A stretch of DNA of 64,000 nucleotides from Salpingoeca rosetta (Eukaryota > Protista > Choanoflagellata), in contig JAWQFM010000003.1 in the NCBI GenBank assembly GCA_033442325.1, forward strand, positions 643,825 through 707,824, in the 5' to 3' direction. Both the position numbers and the translations under genes were made by a program. This document shows positions 47,521 through 62,293 of this stretch, piece after piece. Each line of letters starts with the position of its first letter. Position 1 is the first letter of the stretch. The notes under the pieces were generated by a model that saw nothing but the letters and a program-made list of their open reading frames with translations, was not told the DNA's origin and made no database searches.

Positions 47521-48391
47521 CTGAGCAGGATGCGCGACCCTGTTGCAGTTTGTTTTTGTTGTTGGTGAAATTGGTTCACTTGCTGCGTATCTGTCGCGTG
47601 CTCGACTTTCTGGCGCCGAATCACAGCAACCCCCTTTCCTATTCTAGCTCATCCTCCGTCAACGCCCATGATTGCGTGCCTTCAACCTGCTGCAATTACA
47701 GATCTTGCGGGAGACGCCTGGCCGCCTGCTGAAGAACGTGACCCCTTCCTCCCCCATTGGCCGCGCCCTTCCCGGCCCAATCTTCGAGACAGTGCTGGTT
47801 GCACACGTGCGAGTTGCCGCAGAGTACCCCGAGTGGATGGACGACCAGTGGCCCAACCTTGCTGCCTGCTTGCACCCGTTCACATCCTGGGCTGAGCTTG
47901 GCCGCAGCTGGGCAGCGTGCACGCTCTGTGTGACGCGCTGCATCCAGCAAGGGATGGTGGATGCAGCCATGGCGCTTGAAGAGCACGACAAAGCTGCCGC
48001 CACGACCGTGTCATCCTCGCGGTCATCCCCTGCTTCCACGTCGGCATTTCCCGGGGCAACGGAGGGCAGCGCGCCGCGGCGAAGGCGGCGCACGGGCACG
48101 GGCGACTCCGTGTTTCGTGGTGAGAGCCAAGGCGGCGGTGGTAACGATGGCCGCGACAATGGCGACGTTGGTGATGTTGGTGGTGGTGGTGATGGTGGTG
48201 GCGATGGGGAAAATAAGCGTGGACAAGAGAAGCGAGAACATGACACGCGCAGGGCTGACGATGATGGCGAGCAGCACACAACAACGGAGAGGTTAACCCC
48301 GCCTTTGGAGGCTGCGGCGCAAGACAACAGCAGTGACGCCAAAGGTATGGACGGGACTGGAACGGGCACGTCTTCTTCCCCACCCCCTCCA

Positions 48392-48472
<81 letters not shown>

Positions 48473-50710
48473 GAGTCATCTTCTGTGAGTACGCCGGTGT
48501 CGCGGCAGTCGAGCCATAACGCCAGCCCACCCGACCACCATGCCACCGCCACCGCAGCTACAACTACAAGTGAGCGTCGCCCCCGCTTTGGGTCAAACTC
48601 GAGTGCCACCGGCCCGCATCCACGCCGCGGCCACCCCCGTCTCTCCCTGCGCTCCACCACCTCTGCGTCGGGCCGCAGCGCCGGTTACGGCGACAGCAGT
48701 GGCCCACACCATCACCACCACCAACAGCATCACCAACAGCAGCACGCCGCGCCACCGTCGCCTTTTCGCAGCCCAGGTGGACCGCTCTCTGGCTCGCCTG
48801 GCGGTTCCCAGCGCGCATCGGGGGCGGCCATCCCTGGGCGGTTGTGCAGGGGCGCAAGTCACCTCTCGCTCAGCTCAGCAGCGCCAGACGGGAATGAGCA
48901 GCGGTTCTCTGACCTGGTGCAGCCGCTCTGCTCGCTCGACGCCAACACGCAGCTGCGCATTTGGCGGCACCTTGCGCTGTTCTTTGGCGATTTCAACGCC
49001 ATTGATATTCCCCGCACGCACTGCCTGATTGTGCGCACGTACGGCAGCGTGTTCAAGCTGCTGCACGCAGGCTTCCTCCATGCCGATGACGGCTACCTCG
49101 GCGATTGGGTGCCGCCATTCATGCCGTGGCTGTTTGAGGCCATGGTGCTGAGCCCACGCTTTGCCGAGAGCAAGTATCGCTGCAATCAGCTGGTGTGCGA
49201 GGTGCTGGTGGCCACGGTGGCTGCTCGCCCGGCCCCGCCCAAGGACGTGCTGCACGCCTTTCTCTCCCACCTTGCCCGCGTGCTGCTGCATGCCGACACG
49301 GCCATGGTGTACACGGCGCTGCGCACGTGCTGGGCCCTCGTCGGTCTCAACCTCCCAGGCGCCACGCTGCTCTACCCGCGGCTCGTCGATGTGTGCACGC
49401 TGTGCCTCAACTCACTCCCCGTTGGCTTCCACCAGCAACTGCAGCATCCTGCGACCGCGGGCGTTGGTGCCGATGCGGTGCGCGGTGTCAGGTGGTCACG
49501 GACACAAGGGCCTGCGTCCGCCACCAGCAGCCTTCGCCAAGGCCTGACGGCGCCAAGCCGTGCGCTCTCCCCTAGCCCTGCTCACGCTGCTGCCCATGCA
49601 TCATCTTCCACGCGCTCCTCGCACACATCAACGCCACAGCCGCCGTCGTCCTCGTCATCGGGACGTTCCCCTAAACAACCGCGCCGCTCAAAGATCTCCA
49701 TCTTCCCAGACTCGCCAAAGCAGCAGCGACACCAGCCCGCTTCACAACAGCAGCAACAACAGCAACAACAACAGCAACAACAACAGCAACAACAACAGCA
49801 ACAGCCACAACACTCTGTCCGAGGTGCCATCTCCACATCCCCTCCCCCAGTGCAGCAGCAGCAGCAGCCGCAGCAACCGCCCATGCTCGGGTCTGTGCCC
49901 GGTTCAGCTGCTGGCAGCCAGCATTCGCTCATTCTCCCACGCATTGTTGGAGGCGCAGCGAGTACGACTGCCGTGGCCTCGCGCCGGCCGCCAGCCTCTG
50001 CAGACCAGCACACGGGCCCGCTGGAAGGCAGCGAGGATCTTCCCTTGATGGCTCTACTTGGAATTGCGCCACACGACCTGCTCACCTCGCACGATGACGC
50101 GGCAAGCTTCAGCCCGCATGACATCGGTGTGTCGCCCCACCCGAGCGTGTCCAGCTTGTCCATGCACGCACAGGGTGCCGCTGCAGGTGCTGGCAGTGGC
50201 ATGAGTAAGTTTTCTGCCGCACGGCCTGTGGTCGAGGTCGCCGTGCTGCTTGCGTCCATGGCGTGCTTGCCGGTTGCGTATGACGGCATGAGCATCCCTC
50301 GCATGGAAGTGCAGGTAGCACAGGCATGTGCGCAGCAGCGACAGCAACTACAACAACAATCCCAGGGCGCAACAACCACAGCAACACCAAGCACCAACGA
50401 GGACGTGAACGCTGACATGGAGGAGGCCAAGGCCCGCAATGGTCGGAGCTCGCGAACTGTCGCCGAGCGTGGCCGCTCACGCAGCAGCAGTAACGCTTCC
50501 ATCACCTCCACACATTCGCACGCAGGATCAAGAGAGGATGACGAATTTCGGACAGCGCCCGCCCCAGTCCCGCCTGTTCGGCACAAGCGCAAAAGCAAAG
50601 CAAACCGGGGTCGGAAAACGTCGTCGCCGCCAGATGTGGGCAAGAGTCTGCACGCACCAAAGCTCACCCGTCCACGCTCGGGCAGCTTGGGCATGTTCCG
50701 CGCCCAACAA

Positions 50711-50748
<38 letters not shown>

Positions 50749-53391
50749 GCAGCAGCAGCAGCAGGGAGGTGGACAAGGCGATGATTGTGGTCGCGACAGG
50801 ACGCCGAGCTCAACGTCCCCTGCCCGTTTGCTCCGGCGTGACTCTGCACTGCCGTATGCGCCCACGTCACATTTGCAATCGCCAGGTGGTGGAAGTAACC
50901 TGCTTGCGCAGGACTCTCGCTCGCACGGCGATCTGCGGTCCATCACGGACTCCACGCCGTCGTCGCCCTCACACCAGCAGGGCGCCGCGTCTTCGTTCCG
51001 CCAGGGCCAGCGACGCGTTGCAACGCCATCCAGTCTCAGCCCTCTTTCCAAGCAGCCGACCACGGCAGCAGCCGCGGCTGAACAGCAAATGCCACGACGC
51101 CGCGGCAGCAGCCAGGCCGTTGCAGCGAGCGCGTCACCACCTGCCACCCGCTCACCAGTGGCACTGCTGCTGACGCCAGAGCGAATGTCCTCACAGCAGC
51201 AGCAGCAGCAGCCGCAGCAGCAGCAGCAAGACCGGCCACGTTCGCACAGCAACCACGAGCGCCGTGCCTCCCCGCCAGCGCTGCAGCTAACTCCCGGCCG
51301 TCGAGCGGCGGGCGCTGGGCAGCAAGACCCCGACGAGGGACACAACGACGCACTGCTGCTGGAAGAGGAGGCAATCACAAGCATGCAGACACTGCAAGCG
51401 TCTGTGCAGCGAGGATTGAGGCAGGTGGTGCTGTGCGAAACCCACGTGCAAGCGCAACGCATCAGCCTGCAAGGTTTGTACATCCTGGGTCTCAGTGCCC
51501 TGCTGAACAGGAGCAGCAGCAGCAGCAGCAGCAATAATGACAACGGTCATAACAACAGCGGCATTGATCCACTGGATCACGCTGTCAGCACGACTCACCG
51601 ATGCGTGCAAGTGCTGATCGCGTGCCTGTCGCACCCATCGCTGGAGCTATCGATGACGGCCGTGTCTCTGCTGCACGCACTACATGAGCACGCAGGTGCG
51701 CTGGTCACTGCGAGCCCAGCTGTGGTATCGGAGGTCTTGCTCGGCTTGAGCGTTGCACTTGTGCGCGAAACGCAGACAGACGACACAGACGATGGTGGCG
51801 ACGGCGGTGGTGATGACGGTGACAGTTGTGGCGACATGCCTCCCCCGACCGAGCTGGTGATCCCACTTGTGCTGGCACTGCGCGACTGGCTGTTGCGCTT
51901 ACCGCAGTCGTTTTCAGAGCAGCACGATGGCGTGGTTGGCGGGTGCATCCGCGCCCTGCTGCAGGCCGCCGGTGTGGAACATGCCGAGGAAAGCGAGTTG
52001 CTTGCTGCTGCAGTTACCACTTCTGCCGCTACCACTGCTGCTGCTGCTGCTGCTGGCACAACCACGGCCACGTCTGCGTGTGCTTCTCCCAAGTCGGGAT
52101 CAAAGGAGGACGGCACTATTGACGCCGGTGGCCGCGCCGTCCATGCTGACGTGCTGGCAACTCGGCCAGGGGAGCACGCGTCACAGCTGTTGCATGACCC
52201 TGCATCTGCTCCCAGCACGGCTGACCTCGAGCCAGGGTCTGACGCAAGCGCTGCCTCGCCCACGTCTGCACAACAGCAGGCACTCGCATCGCCCGCCGCC
52301 CGCCGCCCACGCAGTGCACGTGCCAGCTGGCAGGCAGATGCGACTCTGGGATCCAAGCACCGAGACATGTCTGCCTCCCCAGCACTTCAACAACAGCAAC
52401 AACGCCACCACCACCAGCAGCACCAGCAGCAAGGAGGGGCCGCGCCTAATGCTGCGAATACGACCAGTCTCGCCACCACCACCACCACCGCCACCAACGT
52501 CAACACCAGCGGCAGCACCATAGCTGGCGACGCCGAAGACCTGCTGGCGTGGAACACAGACGACATGATCGCCCTGTTCACGCATGCAGCCGCGCCCCAG
52601 CCTGTTTCCGCGCTGCCGTTGCGCAACACCAGTCTTGTTGAGGCGCTTGATCGCGGTACACGTAGCGGGTCGATGCTGCGCCGCCGTCGCCTGCGCAAGG
52701 ACCGCAGCCCGTCCACGTCCGGCAACAAGCACGGGCCGGCGCAGCAGGAGGCATCACCAGACACCCGCAAGCCCGGCGTTGGCGCTCAGCCAGGCACTGG
52801 CGTCGGAACAGCAGGCTTTGGCGGCGGTGGAGGGCGTGCAAGGCTATTGTCTGCACGAAGTGACAACAATGGCACAGCGTGCACAGCGATACCCTCGCCA
52901 ACGACGCCTGGTGGCCCTGTGTTCGTGGCTGCGAAAGACGTGCGCGATGCTGCGGAGTGTGCGCTGTCGTATGTGCTGCACTACACGGGCTGCTTCCCCG
53001 GCCCCGCTGGCGCGGCGCTGCTCGACTCGACCGTGACAGAGACAGCGACGGGCGAGCCGCTGTCCCCGGCAGCCCTCGGGCACCCGGGCCTGCAGTTCTT
53101 CTCCTGCAACGATGTCCTGGTGTCGTTCCAGGAAACGCATGGCAGCTGCCACGTGGTTGTGCGCAACATTGCGGGCAAGTTTGTGTGGGACCTGGGACCT
53201 GCCGTTGGCGCGGGCGGTCGGCAGCGCAAGCTCATGCCGCGGCGGCCAACTCTCGACCTGCACAAGCACGGTGTGGAGAAGGGCAAGCGCGGCAGCGGCC
53301 TGCTTGGCGTGCATGGCGACGACCTTCGGCGCAGCGCCAGCTTGAGCATGGCCGCATCTGCAGTGCGAAAGCGCCGTGAGCGTGCGAGACA

Positions 53392-53430
<39 letters not shown>

Positions 53431-55435
53431 TGAGACACGTGCACAAGCAGACACGGACGATGGCGAAGGGGTGAATGTGCCCTCGTTGCCAGCGACACGC
53501 GCATCAGGCACAGGATCTCAGGACAGTGGCGCCACCAGCACTGGCGGTGATGGTGACGGGAGCGTTCGTCCGCGGTCGCGTGTGAGTGCAGCGGCGCGAG
53601 CAGCGGCAGCAAAGGTGCGCGGGCGCATCAGCAGCAGGGCAGAGCGAGAGGAGGGCACGACGTCGCCTGGGGAACCGCAACAGTTCACTTCACGGCCCCA
53701 GTCTCGCAACCACGCGTCATCAGCAACGGCCGTCGATGAAGGCACACCTCGACAGGATGGGCAGGCACATGAATCACGGACGCCTGGGACTGACCCGGAC
53801 GAGGATGGTCATGGCAACAACAATGACGGCCGTGCAGACGTGGCAGAAACTGCAAGTGGGGCTGGCAGGCGGCCACTGCGCCGGTATGGCAGCGTGTATT
53901 CTGGTGAGAGCGTGAGCGGGAACGCACACCATGCCAATGACGGTGACAGCGGTGATGGAGACGATGGGCAGGATGAGGATGAGGATGAGAATGAGAATGG
54001 GGATGAGAATGAGGATGAGGATCCAACAATGGTGTGGCAGTCGCTCCTGTCTGGAGAACAAAAGGTTCCGTGCCGGGTGCTCGCTGCACACGAGGACAGC
54101 ACGACGTCCGTGGCGCTGCCATCGTTTGGTGATCCCGGCGACATTCACACGGTGGTGCCAGCGGAGGCGCGGGTGAGCTTTCTCCTGCACTACTTGGACG
54201 CAACCGCTGGTGATAAAGGCTTGCACCCGACGGTGTTTGATGGCCAGGGTGGACAGCTGGTGCAGGCACCGGCGTCGGTGCTGAGGGCTGCCGATGCAGC
54301 CCGTGCGTGCCATGAGACGCTGCAAGAGCGGACGGCGACCACGGCCGCGCGGGCGGCCATCTCGCCCGCGTTTGTGGGCGACGAGAGCGCATTTGCACCC
54401 CTGTTTGACACGAGCACAGGGTCAACCACACCACCCGGAGCAGCGACGGCAGGTACGACAGGCAGCTCAAGGCAAATGCGTGCGCTGGCGGCTGGCGGGG
54501 CTGCAAGCGGCGTCGACCTTGACACCACGGGCGCGCGGCTGCGGCGGGACGCGTTTGCCATGTGCCGCTCGCTGCTGATGGAGGTTGGCCTGCTGTCGTG
54601 GGGATCGGACGCGTCGCTGTTTGCGCTGAACAAAGGCAACAAGCTGCTGCGTGAGCTCAAGCACCTGGATACGGCTGGCGGGGTGCGGGAGCAGCACAAG
54701 GTCGCTGTCATCTATGCGGGCCCGCAGCACCGCACCAAGGAGGAGATCATCACGGGCGTGCGCACGAGCGTGGAGTTTGAGGAGTTTCTGGCGCAGCTCG
54801 GGTGGCAGGTGAACATTGACGAGCATCGCGGGTACGCGGGCAAAGTGTCGTCGGCGGAGTTTCCCGGGTGCCTGCTGCCCTATTACGCCACCCCCACGCT
54901 GGAGGTGCTGTTTCACGTGACCACGCGCATGTGTCCCTTGGGGCCTGGGCAGGCTGCGCGCAGTGGCAGGGCGGTGGTGACCGAGGACGGGGCGCTGCTG
55001 TCGGCGGAGGTGCGCAAGCATGTGTACAAGTCGCGCTGGGTGCACGTTGGCAACGATTCTGTGCACATTGTGTGGTGCGAGCAGGCGCGGGAGTTTCAGC
55101 CGGAAATCTTCCAGACGCGGTTTGGGGAGGTCACGATTGCCGTGTACCCGATGACCAATGGCCTTTTCCGCATCCACGTGTTCAACAAGTCCTCGGTGGC
55201 TGTTGGGCCCCTGTTCCATGGGGCGGTGGTGGACATGGCGTGCCTGCCGAGCCTTGTGCGGGAGACGGCGGTCAATGCGGGGCGTGCGCTGCGGCAGAGC
55301 GCCACGAGCAAGCAGTTTATCAGCACGCGGCTGGAGAGCATCCGCAAGATTACGCGCTCCCTCCGCGTTGACCAGTCGTTTGAGGACCTCAACGCGTCCA
55401 TCATCTTCCCCACAAAGCCGCAAACGCCAACTTGA
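43414..55435 (+). CDS. RALGAPA: Ral GTPase-activating protein alpha subunit-like (C-terminal Rap-GAP domain), very large and rich in polyQ and low-complexity sequence; last exons 45567-47329 and 47702-55435
   Basis: N-terminal KVLDTKRVPLKRLKSL, PDQFYRKWQFRSISIVL and LRKEGIRL match the RALGAPA1/2 N-terminus. C-terminal LLRELKHLD, HKVAVIY, LGWQVNIDEHRGYAG, PYYATPTLEVLFHVTTRM, HVGNDSVHIVWCE, FGEVTIAVYP and GPLFHGAVV form a Rap-GAP fold with the Asn thumb. Confidence 0.9.
48395..48472 (+). repeat. Pure (CAA)26 coding repeat (polyQ) in RALGAPA
   Basis: 78 nt of uninterrupted in-frame CAA. Confidence 0.95.
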
Positions 55436-55630: not shown

Positions 55631-58600
55631 ATGTCGTATGCACCAAGCCGTGCCAAGAAGAAGGTCAGGGCTGCGATCGCTGTGTATGCTTGCTGTGTGC
55701 GTGTGCGTGTGCTGGGTGTGTGCGTGTGCTGGGTGTGTGTGCTGGGTGTTTGCTTGAGTGTCGATGCTTCCGTGATCGTGGAACACAAGCGTCGATTTGC
55801 TTTGGGGTCACTGACGATCGATCCCATGTCACCATGCCCACACTGTGCACGCCGCATCCTCATTGCCTTTGGTTCATCGTCTGCTGCCTCTGCTTCTTCT
55901 TGTGTTTTCAGGCGCCCAAGTCCTCGGGCTTCTTCTCCAAAAGTGCCTTTGGCTCGGATGATGAGAGCGACTTTGTGCCATCAAGAGCACAGGTGCGCAA
56001 AACACTGCTGTTTGTTGCGCATGGTGCACTTGCAAAGTGCCTTGCCATCTCTCACACTCACACCCAACACATGCACACACCCAACACACACACACACACT
56101 CTCACTCACTCACTCACTCACTCATTCACTCACTCACTCACTCACTCACTCATTCACTCACTCATTCACTCACTCACTCACTCACTCACTCTCACTCACT
56201 CACTCACTCATTCACTCTCTCACTCTCACTCACTCACTCACTCTCACTCACTCACTCTCTCTTTCATGATGCCCCAACAGAAGAAGAAGAAAGGAAAGAA
56301 GAAGGCTGCTCCCTCAAAGGCACGAAGCCCTTCGCCTATTTCAAAGGGTGAGTAACGCCATGCAATGCCCCATGCACTCTTGCTTGCCTTGCGCGCTCAA
56401 GATTAGTGTGAGAAGATGAACTGCTGCCACTGATGCTCATGCCCATGTTCGATCACACCCTAAAAAACAAACACACACACACACACACACACACGATCAC
56501 AACGCTTGTTTGTTTGTGCAAACAGCTGACTTTGACCTTGGCGGAGCAAGTAAGTGTATGTGACAGCTTAATCCCTTCGCTTGAAGTGTTGCTCCAGCCT
56601 ACCCTGCGAATGCGTGGATTCTTTTGTCATCCCTGCTCTGCTTCGCTTGTGTCTGCTCCTTTCTTGGTAATTGTCTCACGTCCTTGTCTCCGTTGCTGCT
56701 GCGTCATCTCTGTGCCTGCTCAGAGAAATCTGCTGGGCCACCTCCCCCGCCGCCGGGCCCGCCACCTCCACCAGCACCGCCGCCACCAGGCAAAAGTGCG
56801 TGCCCCTTAAAACCCCTTGTTTCCCCGTGTGTCAAGCGTGTCAAACCTCCTGCGTATTGTTCGACAATTCACACCATCATGGCTTGCCCTTTAACAACCA
56901 ACCCCCTGTGCGCTCTGACAGAGAAACCAGCTGGCGCACCTCCCCCGCCAGCGCCCCCGCCACCAGGCAAACGTGCGTATGCCTGGCGCGTGTGTCCTCG
57001 CTTCTGTGAGTGTAGTGTCAAGCATCGCCATTCTGCAGCTAACACGTGCTGCTGCACCCCTTGATCCCCGTGTGTTCTTGCAGAGAAAACTTCGGCCCCG
57101 CCTCCCCCACCGCCCGGCCCACCACCACCTCCTGACGCATCCCCACTGGGGAAATCAAGTACGACCGGATACACGCGTTGCGTCCCTACATGCGCCCCTA
57201 AAACTGTCTGGAATGCATGCACTCCTGTTAGTTTGAGCACGCCACTCCTTCAACTCTGTTGTTGCATGTTGTCGTTTGTGTTGCCGTTGCAGAGAAAACC
57301 GCTGCGCCACCGCGAAAGAAAGGTGTACCACCGCCTGCGTCTGTGCAATGCTGTCATCCCATCAGCACAACAACAGTGAACACATACACGCACGTGTGCA
57401 GTGGGCGCACGTGCACGTGCAAATCCAGAAGAGCTTTCGATGGCTTCATTTGATATTCTTGTTATGTTTGCATCGTCTAATGCACATGGTCACGAGCCGC
57501 GCTTCCCACCACTCACCCGTCCACACCATGACAACAACAGCGCCGGCCAAAGACAATGTGCCTCCTCCACCGCCACCACCACCACCTGCTTCCCACACGG
57601 CTGAAGGTGTGCATGCTCGGCACTCTTCGTTGTGTTGTCCACTACCTTACATGCTCGACATCACAACAGTAATCGCTTGCACTCACACAACGGGGTGTTT
57701 ATCTCCCTCCCCTCCCCCTTCCTCTTCCTGCTCCCTGCCTCCCTTCCCTTCCTTCCCTTCTGTCTCCTTCCTGGCTCATGAATACAGACAAGTCAGCCAA
57801 GCTGATGAAGCGCGTCAACGCCGCCATTGCTGCGGGCGCCAGCGACCTGTTCGGGCGCGGCAAGCTCATGCTTGTTGGGCAGGGCCGCGCTGGCAAGACG
57901 ACAACGCTGCGCTCTCTGCTTGCCAAGCCGTTTGAAAAGGACCAGCAGTCCACGGTCGGCGCAGCGACGAGCGACATGGCCGTCACCGTCGACACCCAGG
58001 ACGTTCGCTCCTGGCAGGTGTGTGTTGTGTTGTGTGTTGTGTGCGTGTGTGTGCATGTGTGTGCGCGCATGTGTGTGTGTGCGGGTGCATGATAAGTGTG
58101 TGTGTGTGCACGAATTGTGTGTGCATATTATATTGATCCTACCAATGTGGATGGTGCTGTTTCCCTGCTGCGAATGGCAATCCCACCCACCCCCATCCCA
58201 CCTTCCATCGCGCGGTTTGTCTTGTCTTACAAACACCTTGTGCGCACAATCACGCTGCCCACAGGAGACGAAAGGCGAAGAGTCGGAGATGGCGCGTGCG
58301 CTGCGCTCTGGCGCCATGGTCGACGATGACGACAGCAGCGGCGACGGCGCAGGCAAGCACGCCTTCCGCTCCCCGACGGAGGAGAAGAAGAAGCGCAAGA
58401 AGGCGATGAAGGAGCAGCACAACGGCCGCCAGAGCGAGGCCGTGCTAGCGGATGAGGGCGACGACGACGCCGACGACGCCACTGCCAACGGTGATGACGG
58501 CGCAGATACATCTGCCGCCGCCTCTGAGCTGGAGAAGGCCGTGACCGACCTGAACCTGGAGGCAAACATTGGCACCATCGAGGACGATGGCTTCCGCGTC

Positions 58601-58678
58601 ACGTTCAAGATCTTCGACCTGGGCGGCCAGCCCACCTTCTACATCTTCCATCCGTTCTTCCTCACCAAGTCAGTCTGC

Positions 58679-58721
<43 letters not shown>

Positions 58722-61700
58722 ATTTCTGCACACTTGTGCGCTTTTCTCCCCGTGTGCTTGTGTGTCTGCACGTGCATGCATGCGCACAAATTGTTGTCGT
58801 CGGTTATGGTCGCCACAAGTCCTCCAGCCCCCCCCCCCATATGCGCTATTGCCATCGCGCACTGCGTTCATTCAATTCACTTTGACGCCAACCCGTTCCC
58901 TCCCTCTCCTCTCTTTGTCATGCAGGTATGCGGTGTACGTCGTCGTGTTCTCGATGGCGGACGTCATGAGCAAGGACGAGATGGTGAGCGCGGAGACGTG
59001 GGAGTTTATCGACCACTGGCTCGGCTCCATCTTCCTCTACGCGCGCGGGGCGCCCGTGTTCATGGTGGGCACCTTTGGCGACGAGGTCAATCAGCGCAAG
59101 CAGCACGAGCGCATCTCCCAGCAGATCTTCGAGCGCTTCAGTGCCCACGCCGCCTTCCCGCAGCTCGTGTACAACAAGACGGCCAACATGTGGTTCTGGC
59201 CCGTGGACAACACCCAGTCCATCAAGGACCCGATGATTGCCAACCTGCAGCGCTGCATCTCGGACGAGGCCGGCAAGCAGGAGCACGTGCGCATGCGGGT
59301 CCCCCTGCCGTTTCTGGCGCTGTATGACAAGCTCATGTCGCTGCACAAGGAGGAAGACCGCCCCGTCGTGCGCCTGCCGGAGATTGAGGCGCTTGCCCAC
59401 AAGTTTGGGCTGGATCACCAGGCCACCATCGACTGCCTGCGCTTCTGGCACGAGTACTCCATGCTGCTGTACTTTGACACCGTGCCCGGCATGGAGGAGG
59501 TGGTGATCCTCAGCCCGCAATGGGCGGTCGACGTCATGTGCAAGGTCATCCGGAACTTTGACCTGCACACGGTGCTGCAGGACCGCGAGGCGCGCCACTT
59601 CAACCGCCAGTGGCAGGAGCTCACCCGCCGCGGCATCCTGCACCGTGAAATGCTTGATCTGCTCTGGAGCGACATGGCCAAGGACCTCGTCGACCCGTTC
59701 CTCGACCTCATGATGCGCTTTGGCCTCTGCGTGACGTACCGCGAGCCCACGCGCAACCAGGGCATGACGGCTGGCCTGTCTCTCGACGACGGCACCATCA
59801 CCCACGCCGAAATGGCGGGCGCGCTCTCCTCCTCGCAGAAGCAGCAGCTGCTGCAGCAAGGCGGTGGTGGCGGCGATGACGGCGACGCCGTGGATGCTGC
59901 GGCCAGGGCGTACCTGGTGCCGGCCATTCTGCCGCTCACGCTGGACGGCAGCAAGTTGCCATCCACGACGCTGAGCAGCTTTGCCGGTGGCCAGCTCAAC
60001 CGCTACGACTACCACGACAGGACCGCCGTGTACATATCTTTCTTCCTGGACGACTTTGCCAGCACGGACCCCGTTGTGCTGGTGAATGACCTTGTGCGCA
60101 CGAGCTTCCTGCCGGAGGGCCTCTTCTCGCGCGTCGTCGCCCACCTGATTGGCAGCTCCCAGTTCACCATGGTGACCAAGCCGCGCCTGAGCCGCACGCA
60201 GGCGGACGTGTACTTCCACGACTGCAAGGTGCAGCTGCGCCTTGTGCCCGAGGTTGGCGGCGTGAAGGTGCTCATTGAGGCCGCACAGCCACGCCCGCTG
60301 CTGCGCATGGTGCAGGACACCATCATCCACAGTGTGCAGAAGCACTACGAAGAGCTGCGCGTGTACACGCTGCTGCCGTTTTCCCCCAAGGCACTGCTGT
60401 TCCTCGACGACGTCATTGAACACCACCGCCAGCGCCACTCCATGTGGGTTGAAGGCGCCCAGATCAAGCCAGCAGAGCTTGAGGAGCGCTACGGCACCTG
60501 GCTCCCCACCACGGGCCTGCGTACCTTCTACGACAGCTTCCTCAGCTACAGGTTGGTTGGTGGGCGACGCTCCGACCCTTTGCTGCCCTTTCTCGTGGCA
60601 TATGCAATATCGTCCATGAGATTGCGAACACGTGACACCGGCCTTTCTATTTTCTCACCATTGTGCGCAAACACACACACACACACACACACACGCGCGC
60701 ACGCACGCACGCACGCACACGCACGCAACCGCATATGCGCAAACACACACACACAAACACACACTCTCTCTCACACACTCTCTCTCACTCACACTCACAC
60801 TCACATAATCACACTCACACAAACACCTGCAGGCAAGGCGCCAACAGCAGCTTTGTTGTGAACCTGCATGTTGTTCTGGAGGAGAACCAGCTCATCTCGT
60901 TCCTGGACGCGAACAACCTGGAGACGGGCGTCAACTTCAAGATGGCGTTTATGGAGGCCATCAGCCGCAGCCTTGTGGCGTGCCCCGTCGTCTCTGCGGG
61001 CGCTGTCGAACGCATGTTCCAGATCCGCCACGGCGACTACTGCGACAACGTGCTGCTGGAGTGGATGACCATGCTTGCTTTGCTGGATTACGTCATGGAG
61101 TGCGAGCATGCTGGCCAGGACGTCGTGGCTGACAGCGCCACCAACGGCGACCACGCCACCGCCACGCCCGTGTTCCTGCGCCGCATTGCCCCGCTCGTTG
61201 TCAGCAAGGCCTGGCACAACTCGGAGCTCTCGTCAAACAAGGTCTTCACAGACACGTTTGCCGACCTGCGCACGCTGTGCAACAGCCTGCCGGATGTGGT
61301 GAGCGAGCAGACGACGCGCCCACTGGAGGCGTTCTTCAAGGACCGCCTGCACCTGCGAGCTCCCAAGCGCCGCACGGTTCGCCAGGCAGTGCAGGAGCTG
61401 CTGGACATGGACGCCATCTTCTGCTGGGAGAGCGCAGACGCCACAGACAGCCGCGCGCACCAGGCTGTCGGCGTGGCCGTCACCACGGAAGCGCACAAGG
61501 TGCACCGTCTTCGCGGGTACGCCAACGAGGTGCGCCAGGTTGTGCTGCGCGCCAAGCAGCTGGCAGACGACGATGAGGCGCTCAAGCTTGCCATGCAGGC
61601 TGGCATGGAGCGGTCCGGCGCCCACCTCCTCTCGTCCTCCGCTGCACGCCATGCCACGATGAGCGCATCCCACGACTCCTCCAAGCCGACGCCACCGAAG

Positions 61701-62293
61701 GACGAGCCCGCGCCGGCCCCGCCAGCAGCAGTGGCGGCCTCCACCCTTACTGCACGCGCCATGTCAGACAGGCCTGTTGAGCAGTGGAGCGAGGACGACG
61801 TTGTGGCATGGCTTGCGCAGGAGAAGTTTGACGCAATGGTGCCTGCGTTTCAGCGCGAGCACGTTGACGGCACTCTGCTCATGGCCCTTTCCGATGACAT
61901 GCTCGCCAACGAAATGGTTGGTTTGGCTTGGGTCGAAGAGGGAAAGGGGTGTTGGGGGCATGTACTAACACATTTCTGCTCGCCTCGGTTGGTTGCTTGT
62001 GTCTTCTTTGGTTGACACTTCATGAAGCTTCTACTGTTGTGTTAACACTCACTCACTCACTCACTCACTCACTCACTCACTCACTCACTCACTCACTCAC
62101 TCACTCACTCACTCACTCACCATGGCAGGGTGTCGCCAATCGCGTGCAGCGGATTCGCTTTGAACAGCGCCGTGCCCTGCTGATGGGTACCACGACCCCC
62201 TCCGGCACCACTCCCTCGGCTTCGGCTGCGTCCTCCCGCCCTGCCAGTGCCCGTTCCCGCAGACGCAAGCCCCGTGTCTGCGTCATTGCTTGA
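55631..62293 (+). CDS. Roco-family protein: polyproline N-terminus, ROC GTPase, COR, TIR, SAM, polybasic CaaX (about 1335 aa); exons 55631-55663, 55912-55992, 56281-56347, 56526-56549, 56724-56795, 56922-56972, 57084-57158, 57293-57322, 57541-57606, 57788-58017, 58265-58668, 58926-60551, 60833-61916, 62129-62293
   Basis: ROC: KLMLVGQGRAGKTT, QSTVG, FKIFDLGGQPTFYIFHPFFLT, PVFMVGTFGD. COR: LRFWHEYSMLLYF, VILSPQW, LPEGLFSRVV. TIR: YDSFLSYR...FLDANNLETG...PVVS...DNVLLEW. SAM: VEQWSEDDVVAWL...FQREHVDGTLLMAL. C-terminus RRRKPRVCVIA-stop. Exon phases sum to 4008 nt. The 5' mini-exons are less certain than the core. Confidence 0.85.
56098..56260. repeat. (CACT)n tetranucleotide repeat in a Roco intron; similar tracts at about 975-1060, 16603-16637 and 62046-62120
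   Basis: Tandem cact/gagt units are directly visible. Confidence 0.9.

What the first reader, a model, noticed from the sequence alone, without database searches (positions are those of the whole stretch)
60529..61210. TIR domain aligns with the SARM1 TIR and keeps the catalytic glutamate
The spliced sequence YDSFLSYR|QGANSSFVVNLHVVLEENQLISFLDANNLETGVNFKMAFMEAISRSLVACPVVSAGAVERM...CDNVLLEW...RIAPLVV parallels SARM1 as I recall it (DVFISYRR...VFIDVEKLEAG.F...VLSPGALD...KDWVHKE...IVPII). The GAG at 61059-61061 sits at the E642-equivalent position needed for NADase activity. The Trp four residues upstream is replaced by Asn, which could alter activity or product (ADPR versus cADPR isomers). An intron splits the first strand, so the domain is easy to miss in an ORF scan.
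Basis: partly seen in the sequence, partly recalled or inferred. Interest (0 to 1): 0.75.

Follow-up and report, generated by a model that had tools for sequence, protein, structure and literature searches.

The report
Catalytic-type TIR domain in choanoflagellate Roco
This stretch encodes a genuine TIR domain with the NAD-cleaving glutamate intact, inside an already annotated Roco GTPase gene of the choanoflagellate Salpingoeca rosetta, and a sister copy of the same domain has already been shown to make cyclic ADP-ribose, so the finding is correct but largely known.

Summary
The intron 60552-60832 (GT..AG, inside an Arg codon) splits FYDSFLSYR from QGANSS..., and GAG 61059-61061 encodes the Glu of CDNVLLEW. 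The genome is Salpingoeca rosetta. The gene is the annotated PTSG_11865 (XP_004996783.1, F2U1S7, 1335 aa), and the public model uses exactly this junction.

The architecture is polybasic/polyproline N-terminus, Roc, COR-A/COR-B, TIR, SAM, polybasic CVIA tail. A family profile hits SARM1 TIR best among solved structures (E 1.2e-8), with this Glu on E642 and Asn on W638. An AlphaFold model (pTM 0.80) matches only TIR domains (Z 11-12.4).

The gene is one of at least 43 paralogous TIR exons. All 26 family copies inspected share the intron position, and 36 of 40 keep the Glu.

A 2026 preprint from the Sorek laboratory showed that the TIR of paralogue F2UB80 (43% identical) makes cADPR. It assigns that paralogue's catalytic residue to the same Glu, and reports that mutating the catalytic Glu abolished cADPR production in all its active TIRs. 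So the Trp-to-Asn change does not prevent catalysis.

This copy's TIR falls below Pfam's cut-off and is not in the precomputed Pfam list. An orthologue in another organism keeps the motif and the intron. The scan reported a paralogue of this family earlier on other DNA of this genome.

Verdict: new member of a known kind, with modest interest.

The parts
57787..58017 (+). Roc GTPase exon with the P-loop (GQGRAGKTT)
   Evidence: Pfam Roc 31.6 bits on this exon. The public protein P0029 continues ...VRSWQ|ETKGE, so the exon ends at 58017, followed by GT.
58262..58680 (+). Roc exon with a long acidic insert and the DLGGQ switch II motif (boundaries approximate)
   Evidence: tblastn of P0029 residues 243-385 onto the window. 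FKIFDLGGQPTFYIFHPFFLTK is seen in the ORF list.
58924..60551 (+). Exon with the end of Roc, COR-A, COR-B and TIR strand beta-A (FYDSFLSYR, 60526-60551); the 5' boundary is approximate
   Evidence: Pfam COR-A 57.5 bits and COR-B 20.4 bits. tblastn of P0029 residues 378-920 at 99.8% identity.
60552..60832 (+). Intron, 281 nt, GT..AG, phase 2 within an Arg codon, rich in microsatellite
   Evidence: Sequence read. The position is conserved in all 26 family copies inspected and in orthologue L043.
60833..61478 (+). TIR domain after beta-A, P0029 residues 920-1135, including the extended helical C-terminal part that corresponds to the construct tested for the paralogue
   Evidence: Family profile against SARM1 TIR at E 1.2e-8. 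AlphaFold pTM 0.80. Foldseek and VIA hits are TIR domains.
61059..61061 (+). GAG, Glu996 of PTSG_11865, at the catalytic position equivalent to SARM1 E642 and F2UB80 E1118
   Evidence: and Table S4 of doi 10.64898/2026.04.20.719644.
61047..61049 (+). AAC, Asn992, at the position of SARM1 Trp638
   Evidence: HMMER alignments. The residue is nearly invariant in the family.
61776..61916 (+). N-terminal half of the SAM domain
   Evidence: Pfam SAM_2 at 29.6 bits (cut-off 20.5) on P0029 residues 1235-1289.
61917..62128 (+). Intron, 212 nt, GT..AG, phase 0, with a (CTCA)n repeat
62129..62293 (+). Last exon: C-terminal half of SAM, a Ser/Thr-rich linker, the polybasic RRRKPRV stretch and CVIA followed by the stop codon
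   Evidence: tblastn of P0029 residues 1282-1335 at 100% identity. The C-terminus is printed.

Best explanation
The region encodes the TIR domain (residues 912-1135) of the S. rosetta Roco protein PTSG_11865. It is most likely a working NAD+-cleaving TIR enzyme whose main product is cyclic ADP-ribose, with Glu996 on helix alpha-C as the catalytic residue. By analogy with other TIR enzymes, activity should need TIR self-association. In this protein that could come from dimerisation through the Roc-COR module, from the C-terminal SAM domain, and from clustering at a membrane through the polybasic-CVIA prenylation tail, with the Roc GTPase state as the likely gate. Shown here: the gene structure, the TIR fold, the Glu at the SARM1 E642 position, conservation of that Glu across paralogues and in an orthologue, and 43% identity to a paralogue whose TIR makes cADPR; the preprint states that in all its active TIRs mutating the catalytic Glu abolished cADPR production. 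Inferred: activity of this particular copy, its product, GTP gating, membrane anchoring, and any immune or death role.
For: The junction and Glu codon were read directly and match the public protein. Pfam on P0029 finds Roc 54.9, COR-A 55.1 and SAM_2 29.6 bits, and TIR_2 at 24.3 bits, E 4.8e-5. The family profile A2 hits SARM1 TIR at E 1.2e-8, then plant and bacterial NADase TIRs, with Glu on E642. SYR, FxD, LExG and F of the BB-loop region are shared with SARM1. The AlphaFold model has pTM 0.80, with Glu92 in helix 88-108 at pLDDT about 94. The Foldseek top 49 are all TIR. VIA gives Z 12.4 for RUN1 and 11.0 for SARM1. 36 of 40 genomic TIR exons keep the Glu. Orthologue L043 keeps DYCDNVLLEW, at about 76% identity in the TIR core against 52% over the whole exon. 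F2UB80 is P0026, with E1118 in DNVLLEW, and is listed as active with cADPR detected. Identity to it is 43% over 214 residues.
Against: No assay exists for this copy. It is one of the most divergent members, at 43-49% identity to the others. It carries a roughly 20-residue insertion after alpha-C that is modelled with low confidence. Pfam TIR_2 stays below its curated cut-off. The Trp four residues before the Glu, which my own knowledge says is widely kept in SARM1, plant and AbTir-type NADases, is replaced by Asn. Some paralogues have lost the Glu (K, Q or M), so decay does occur in the family. Expression could not be checked. I could not superpose coordinates to see the Glu in the pocket.
Confidence: 0.7

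Rival explanations
1. The TIR is a non-enzymatic assembly module. Like TLR or MyD88 TIRs, it would only recruit other TIR proteins, such as the many paralogues or the TLR-like PTSG_06613, and the Glu would be retained for structural reasons.
For: S. rosetta has many TIR proteins that could be partners, including an LRR-EGF-TM-TIR receptor with the same DNVLLEY motif. This copy is divergent and has a large insertion after alpha-C. The Trp at -4 is absent.
Against: The DNVLLEW block is invariant or nearly so in intact copies and in the orthologue. The paralogue with the same motif is active and makes cADPR, and its catalytic residue is assigned to that Glu. According to the same preprint, scaffold-type animal TIRs mostly lack this Glu.
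Confidence: 0.15
2. The TIR is an NAD+-depleting executioner like SARM1, driving cell death by NAD+ loss, rather than a producer of a cADPR signal.
For: SARM1 TIR is the best sequence match among solved structures. A SAM domain is attached, as in SARM1. Some eukaryotic TIRs in the preprint did deplete NAD+.
Against: In Table S4 the row for paralogue F2UB80 records cADPR, and no entry follows in the columns after it in the held text. The preprint states that most of the TIRs it studied did not deplete NAD+ even after overnight expression. The architecture lacks the ARM autoinhibitory domain and the tandem SAM ring of SARM1.
Confidence: 0.12
3. This copy is a decaying or unexpressed paralogue of a large, fast-turning-over family.
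For: There are at least 43 copies. Several have lost the Glu or parts of the domain: L024, L026, L040, L041 and P0030. One copy has an in-frame TGA.
Against: All exons are open and match a public 1335-residue model. An orthologue in another organism keeps the same exon structure, TIR motifs and SAM domain, with the TIR core being the best conserved part.
Confidence: 0.03

Closest known systems
S. rosetta Roco-TIR paralogue PTSG_12359 (UniProt F2UB80), TIR tested in Hurieva et al. 2026, bioRxiv 10.64898/2026.04.20.719644
   Same: It has the same Roc-COR-TIR backbone, the same intron after YDxFxSYR, and the same FxDANNLETGxNFK and CDNVLLEW motifs. The catalytic Glu is in the same alignment column (E1118 against E996). 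Identity is 43% over 214 residues.
   Different: F2UB80 has LRR_6 and ankyrin repeats at the N-terminus; this protein instead has a polybasic, polyproline N-terminus. This copy has a clear Pfam SAM_2 match and a CVIA prenylation tail. It carries a roughly 20-residue insertion after alpha-C. Its TIR is below the Pfam cut-off, and F2U1S7 was not found in the held supplement text, one file of which is truncated.
Human SARM1 TIR domain (E642 NADase)
   Same: It is the best-scoring solved structure for the family profile (E 1.2e-8). Glu aligns to E642, and the SYR, FxD, LExG and F motifs are shared. The model aligns over all 139 residues at Z about 11 and 22-23% identity. A SAM domain is present in the same protein.
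   Different: There is no ARM domain. There is one SAM after the TIR instead of two before it, and a Roc-COR GTPase sits upstream. Asn replaces Trp638. Plant TIRs match the model equally well. No tree was built, so membership of the SARM1 clade is untested.
Roco proteins with TIR in other lineages (for example TPR-ROCO-TIR of Chondrus crispus, PMC11378527) and Roco proteins in general (LRRK2, DAPK1)
   Same: A Roc-COR tandem is joined to an output domain, and TIR is a reported Roco partner domain.
   Different: The output here is TIR plus SAM instead of a kinase or death domain. Most S. rosetta paralogues have LRR/Ank sensor repeats, which this copy lacks.
Bacterial ThsB-type TIRs of Thoeris
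   Same: A DNVLLE(Y) block around the catalytic Glu, with Asn at -4, also occurs in bacterial Thoeris TIRs listed with a catalytic Glu in the preprint's supplement.
   Different: Those are short stand-alone bacterial proteins. No overall homology beyond the TIR fold was tested here.

Membership tests
TIR domain (Pfam TIR_2 PF13676 / TIR PF01582) | Profile match at the curated threshold | tested here: inconclusive
   P0029:905-1060 scores TIR_2 24.3 bits, E 4.8e-5, against a cut-off of 28. Exon 2 alone scores 16.6 bits. Relatives pass: P0026 33.3, P0032 29.8, L014 exon 29.4 and L023 37.7 bits. The family profile hits SARM1 TIR chains at E 1.2e-8.
TIR domain (Pfam TIR_2 PF13676 / TIR PF01582) | Flavodoxin-like alpha/beta TIR fold | tested here: met
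   The AlphaFold model of P0029:905-1135 has pTM 0.80 and alternating beta/alpha elements. The Foldseek top 49 hits are all TIR domains at probability 1.00. VIA gives Z 12.4 for RUN1 (rmsd 3.5 over 152 residues) and Z 11.0 for SARM1 (rmsd 3.0 over 138 of 139).
Catalytic (NADase/cyclase) TIRs | Glutamate on helix alpha-C at the SARM1 E642 position | tested here: met
   HMMER aligns the Glu to E642. It lies at residue 92 of model helix 88-108. It is in the same column as E1118 of F2UB80, which the preprint assigns as catalytic from structural alignment.
Catalytic (NADase/cyclase) TIRs | NAD+ cleavage or cADPR production abolished by mutating the Glu | not testable with these tools
   cADPR production is recorded only for paralogue F2UB80 in E. 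coli lysates, and the Glu dependence is stated for the preprint's active TIRs as a group. This copy has not been assayed.
Catalytic (NADase/cyclase) TIRs | Trp four residues before the Glu (WxxxE, as in SARM1 W638) | tested here: not met
   Asn992 occupies this position. The same Asn is present in the active paralogue and in Thoeris TIR sequences, so it is not required for activity.
SARM1 orthologues (ARM-SAM-SAM-TIR) | N-terminal ARM domain and tandem SAM domains preceding the TIR | tested here: not met
   Pfam on P0029 finds Roc, COR-A, COR-B, TIR_2 and a single SAM after the TIR, with no ARM domain.
SARM1 orthologues (ARM-SAM-SAM-TIR) | The TIR branches with SARM1 TIRs in a phylogeny | not tested
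   Only score ranking is available: SARM1 38 bits against plant TIRs 34-35 bits. No reference set was available by reference to build a tree.
Roco proteins | Roc GTPase followed by a COR domain | tested here: met
   Roc 54.9 bits, COR-A 55.1 bits, COR-B 18.6 bits (below cut-off) on P0029. The P-loop GQGRAGKT and the DLGGQ motif are seen.
S. rosetta Roco-TIR paralogue family (cluster of F2UPN6/F2UB80) | Homologous TIR exon with a shared intron position and the DNVLLEW motif | tested here: met
   There are 43 genomic hits at E down to 2e-36. The intron position is shared in all 26 family copies inspected. Identity to other members is 44-49%.

The most novel reading that the evidence does not exclude
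PTSG_11865 and its orthologue would form a distinct, sensor-less branch of the Roco-TIR family. In this reading, a proline-rich, prenyl-anchored Roc GTPase directly gates a TIR-SAM cADPR synthase at a membrane. That would be the first G-protein-switched TIR enzyme, and a pre-animal counterpart of the SAM-TIR engine of SARM1 that links GTPase state to NAD-derived second messengers.
Probability: 0.15. Interest if true: 0.65.

Novelty: new member of a known kind. Interest (0 to 1): 0.3.

Why it matters
The result places one more, rather divergent, catalytic-type TIR in the closest unicellular relatives of animals. It shows that a TIR can escape domain annotation here: the intron splits the first strand and the Pfam score stays under its cut-off. 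Counts of TIR enzymes in choanoflagellates may therefore be too low. The combination of a Roc-COR switch, a TIR enzyme, a SAM domain and a prenylation tail gives a tractable protein for asking how TIR NADase or cyclase activity is switched on outside animals, plants and bacteria. The central claim, a TIR with the catalytic Glu that is probably an NAD+-processing enzyme, is already established for the family by a published assay of a paralogue.

Tried and rejected
1. An AlphaFold model of exon 2 alone, without strand beta-A and with 14 sequences, gave pLDDT 69 and pTM 0.59. Foldseek found no match at E <= 0.001, only NSF and other noise. I replaced it with the public spliced protein.

2. phmmer of exon 2 against PDB sequences found nothing. 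The exon-2 profile gave only E 0.1-1.4.

The spliced sequence I used is the public protein P0029, which a search tool returned.

5. A word search seeded from the TLR-like TIR (L023) returned only that protein itself. The search with the 725-residue ORF missed the window's own protein because of the length window.

7. I considered the reading that this gene is a SARM1 orthologue and rejected it on architecture.

8. I considered the idea that Trp-to-Asn marks an unusual chemistry specific to this copy and rejected it. The change is family-wide and present in the cADPR-producing paralogue.

Full report
**What is in the sequence.** Reading 59800-62200 shows the codons TAC GAC AGC TTC CTC AGC TAC AG followed by GTTGGT at 60552. 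After a 281-nt stretch of CA/CTCA microsatellite comes CTGCAG|G CAA GGC GCC at 60832|60833. GAG at 61059-61061 is in that frame and encodes the Glu of CDNVLLEW. A second intron, 61917-62128 (ATG|GTTGGT ... GGCAG|GGT), interrupts a SAM domain. The last exon ends ...SRRRKPRVCVIA with its stop at 62291-62293.

**Identity of the genome and the gene.** A TIR-bearing ORF elsewhere in the same assembly is 100% identical to PTSG_06613 of Salpingoeca rosetta. A word search seeded with a paralogue returned P0029, 1335 residues: PTSG_11865, XP_004996783.1, UniRef100_F2U1S7. P0029 is 100% identical to window exon 2 over 361 residues. It contains FYDSFLSYRQGANSS and ends in CVIA.

**Architecture.** Pfam on P0029 gives Roc 54.9 bits, Ras 36.3, COR-A 55.1, COR-B 18.6 (below cut-off), TIR_2 20.0 (24.3 bits, E 4.8e-5, when the domain is scanned alone; cut-off 28) and SAM_2 29.6 (cut-off 20.5).
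- The first roughly 170 residues are polybasic and polyproline.
- Most paralogues instead carry LRR_6 and ankyrin repeats in front of Roc.
- The precomputed Pfam list for P0029 has no TIR entry. The domain is therefore easy to miss, both in an ORF scan (exon 2 alone scores 16.6 bits) and in routine annotation.

**Is it a TIR?** Yes.
- A profile of 22 complete TIR regions of the family (A2) finds SARM1 TIR chains first among all PDB sequences, at E 1.2e-8 and 38 bits.
- Next come plant TIRs (AT1G72930, Roq1, L6), bacterial TIRs (BtpA, AbTir), C. elegans TIR-1 and, much more weakly, TLR TIRs.
- An AlphaFold model of P0029:905-1135 built on that alignment has pTM 0.80.
- The 49 best Foldseek hits in the PDB are all TIR domains at probability 1.00.
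- VIA-align gives Z 12.4 for RUN1 (rmsd 3.5 over 152 residues). It gives Z 10.9-11.0 for SARM1 TIR (rmsd about 3.0, 136-139 of 137-139 residues, 21-23% identity, the highest identity in the list).
- Structurally, SARM1 and plant TIRs are tied. By sequence score SARM1 is first, by a small margin.
- An earlier model of exon 2 alone, lacking strand beta-A, folded poorly and matched nothing.

**The glutamate.**
- HMMER's alignment to SARM1 places the family's ...D-c-d-n-v-l-L-E-w... on ...D-C-K-D-W-V-H-K-E-I....
- The SYR after strand A, the FxD of strand B, and the LExG and Phe of the BB-loop region are also shared.
- In the model the Glu is residue 92, in the first turns of helix 88-108. This is the most confident part of the model, with pLDDT about 94.

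**The family.**
- Searching the window's TIR exon against its own genome finds 43 places.
- I fetched 42 loci. All 26 family copies examined for it have the same intron immediately after YDxFxSYR.
- Of 40 hits covering the position, 36 keep Glu. Three have Lys (a tandem pair in L040, plus L041) and one has Gln (L024). L026 has Met and has lost other motifs.
- CDNVLLEW is otherwise invariant.
- The window's copy is among the most divergent, at 44-49% identity to the others. Its nearest relative in the genome is L014.
- It has a roughly 20-residue insertion after helix alpha-C.

**An orthologue elsewhere.** Protein P0002, 61% identical in the COR exon, comes from Logan assemblies of two SRA runs of an unnamed organism with AT-rich introns.
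- Its contig L043 shows ...KYYDTFLSYR|gtcgtt, an intron at the same codon position. A downstream exon is 52% identical to window exon 2.
- Identity is about 76% over the first 83 residues of the TIR, and DYCDNVLLEW is intact.
- The SAM start (W.EDDVVAWL) is also conserved.
- The TIR core is thus the best-conserved part of this exon, which argues for function in this specific lineage.
- A more distant protein from another run (P0032) has the same order: Roc, COR-A, COR-B, TIR_2 (29.8 bits), SAM_1 (39 bits), again with DNVLLEW.

**What is already known.**
- Richter et al. 2018 (PMC6040629) described choanoflagellate TLRs, kinase-TIRs and SARM1 homologues with the conserved Glu, but did not mention Roco-TIRs.
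- Hurieva et al. 2026 (bioRxiv 10.64898/2026.04.20.719644) surveyed about 16,000 eukaryotic TIR domains and tested representatives in E. coli.
- Their Table S4, row 33, is S. rosetta F2UB80: 1352 residues, TIR 1034-1255, catalytic residue 1118, marked Active yes and cADPR yes.
- The text states that in all cases activity depended on the catalytic glutamate.
- F2UB80 is P0026/PTSG_12359, and its residue 1118 is the Glu of DNVLLEW.
- Its TIR is 43% identical to the window's over 214 residues, E 3e-55.
- F2U1S7 itself does not occur in the held supplement text, although one file was truncated when stored.
- The same supplement lists bacterial Thoeris TIRs with a DNVLLEY block around their catalytic Glu.
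- Asn at -4 is therefore a recurrent feature of active TIRs, not something peculiar to this gene.
- TIR has also been reported as a Roco partner domain in a red alga (PMC11378527).
- An earlier follow-up of this scan, on another piece of the genome (s1-435900), reached the same reading for a paralogue. I found the paper and the paralogue link independently, before that look-up.

**Most likely mechanism.** The TIR is probably a Glu996-dependent enzyme that converts NAD+ mainly to cADPR, as its paralogue does. TIR enzymes generally act as assemblies; this is established for SARM1, plant TIRs and AbTir, and I state it from my own knowledge. This protein has three plausible assembly devices: the Roc-COR module, the SAM domain, and a polybasic CVIA tail that should be farnesylated and hold it on a membrane. 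A reasonable model is a GTP-state-controlled, membrane-bound cADPR synthase. Only the sequence, the fold and the paralogue's chemistry are shown; the gating, the localisation and the biological role are inferred. I put about 0.95 on it being a real TIR with the catalytic-position Glu, and about 0.7 on this copy being enzymatically active.

**Rivals.**
- A purely scaffolding TIR (0.15).
- A SARM1-style NAD+-depleting executioner rather than a signal producer (0.12). The paralogue's row records cADPR only, and the preprint states that most tested TIRs did not deplete NAD+.
- A decaying copy (0.03), contradicted by the open frames and the conserved orthologue.

**Comparison and verdict.**
- It works like SARM1's TIR in the sense of sharing the catalytic-type active site. 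It is not a SARM1 orthologue: no ARM domain, a single SAM placed after the TIR, and Roc-COR upstream.
- It is a member of the S. rosetta Roco-TIR family, one member of which has been characterised.
The novelty is limited to recognising the domain in this particular, divergent, sensor-less and prenyl-tailed copy, which routine Pfam annotation misses.
- Class: new member of a known kind. Interest about 0.3.

Noticed in passing
L023:987-4706 (G000:C17, about 943987-947706): A single 1240-codon open frame encodes LRR repeats, an EGF-like module, a transmembrane helix and a TIR_2 domain (37.7 bits) with the motif PDNVLLEY. It is PTSG_06613, a choanoflagellate TLR-like receptor that keeps the catalytic-position Glu and, unlike the Roco copies, has no intron in the TIR.
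   Followed up: partly
L040 (G000:C25:1024938-1027105), L041 (G000:C31), L024 (G000:C32), L026 (G000:C4:1056000-1061000): These paralogous TIR exons have lost the catalytic-position Glu: Lys in a tandem pair and one other copy, Gln in L024, Met in L026. L024 and L026 have also lost the NNLETG motif. One further copy (G000:C5:856678-856977) has an in-frame TGA.
   Followed up: partly
window 55631-57700 (P0029 residues 1-170): The N-terminus of the protein is built from short exons that encode lysine-rich and long polyproline runs (PPPPPPGPPPPPAPPPPGK repeated). This resembles an FH1-type profilin or SH3-binding region and replaces the LRR/ankyrin repeats of the paralogues.
   Followed up: no
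window 62254-62293; also the C-termini of P0013 and P0014: The protein ends in RRRKPRVCVIA, a polybasic stretch followed by a CaaX box. Two paralogues end in CCCLLM and GGGCCALM, so lipid anchoring may recur in the family, whereas most members end in ...AKKC(D/E)V....
   Followed up: no
window 47672-55435, + strand: An uninterrupted 2587-codon open frame lies immediately upstream. It is rich in polyglutamine and low-complexity runs and has a conserved-looking C-terminal domain. It was not analysed.
   Followed up: no
window 60640-60830 and 62040-62120: Both introns of this part of the gene consist largely of (CA)n, (CGCA)n and (CTCA)n microsatellites, and both donors read GTTGGT.
   Followed up: no
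L043 (Logan SRR14727191 contig, 4463 nt) and L045 (Logan SRR28428057 contig, 7132 nt): These are homologues from unnamed organisms. L043 is a likely orthologue with AT-rich introns and the same intron position in the TIR. L045 carries an intron-free 1452-codon Roc-COR-TIR-SAM gene.
   Followed up: partly
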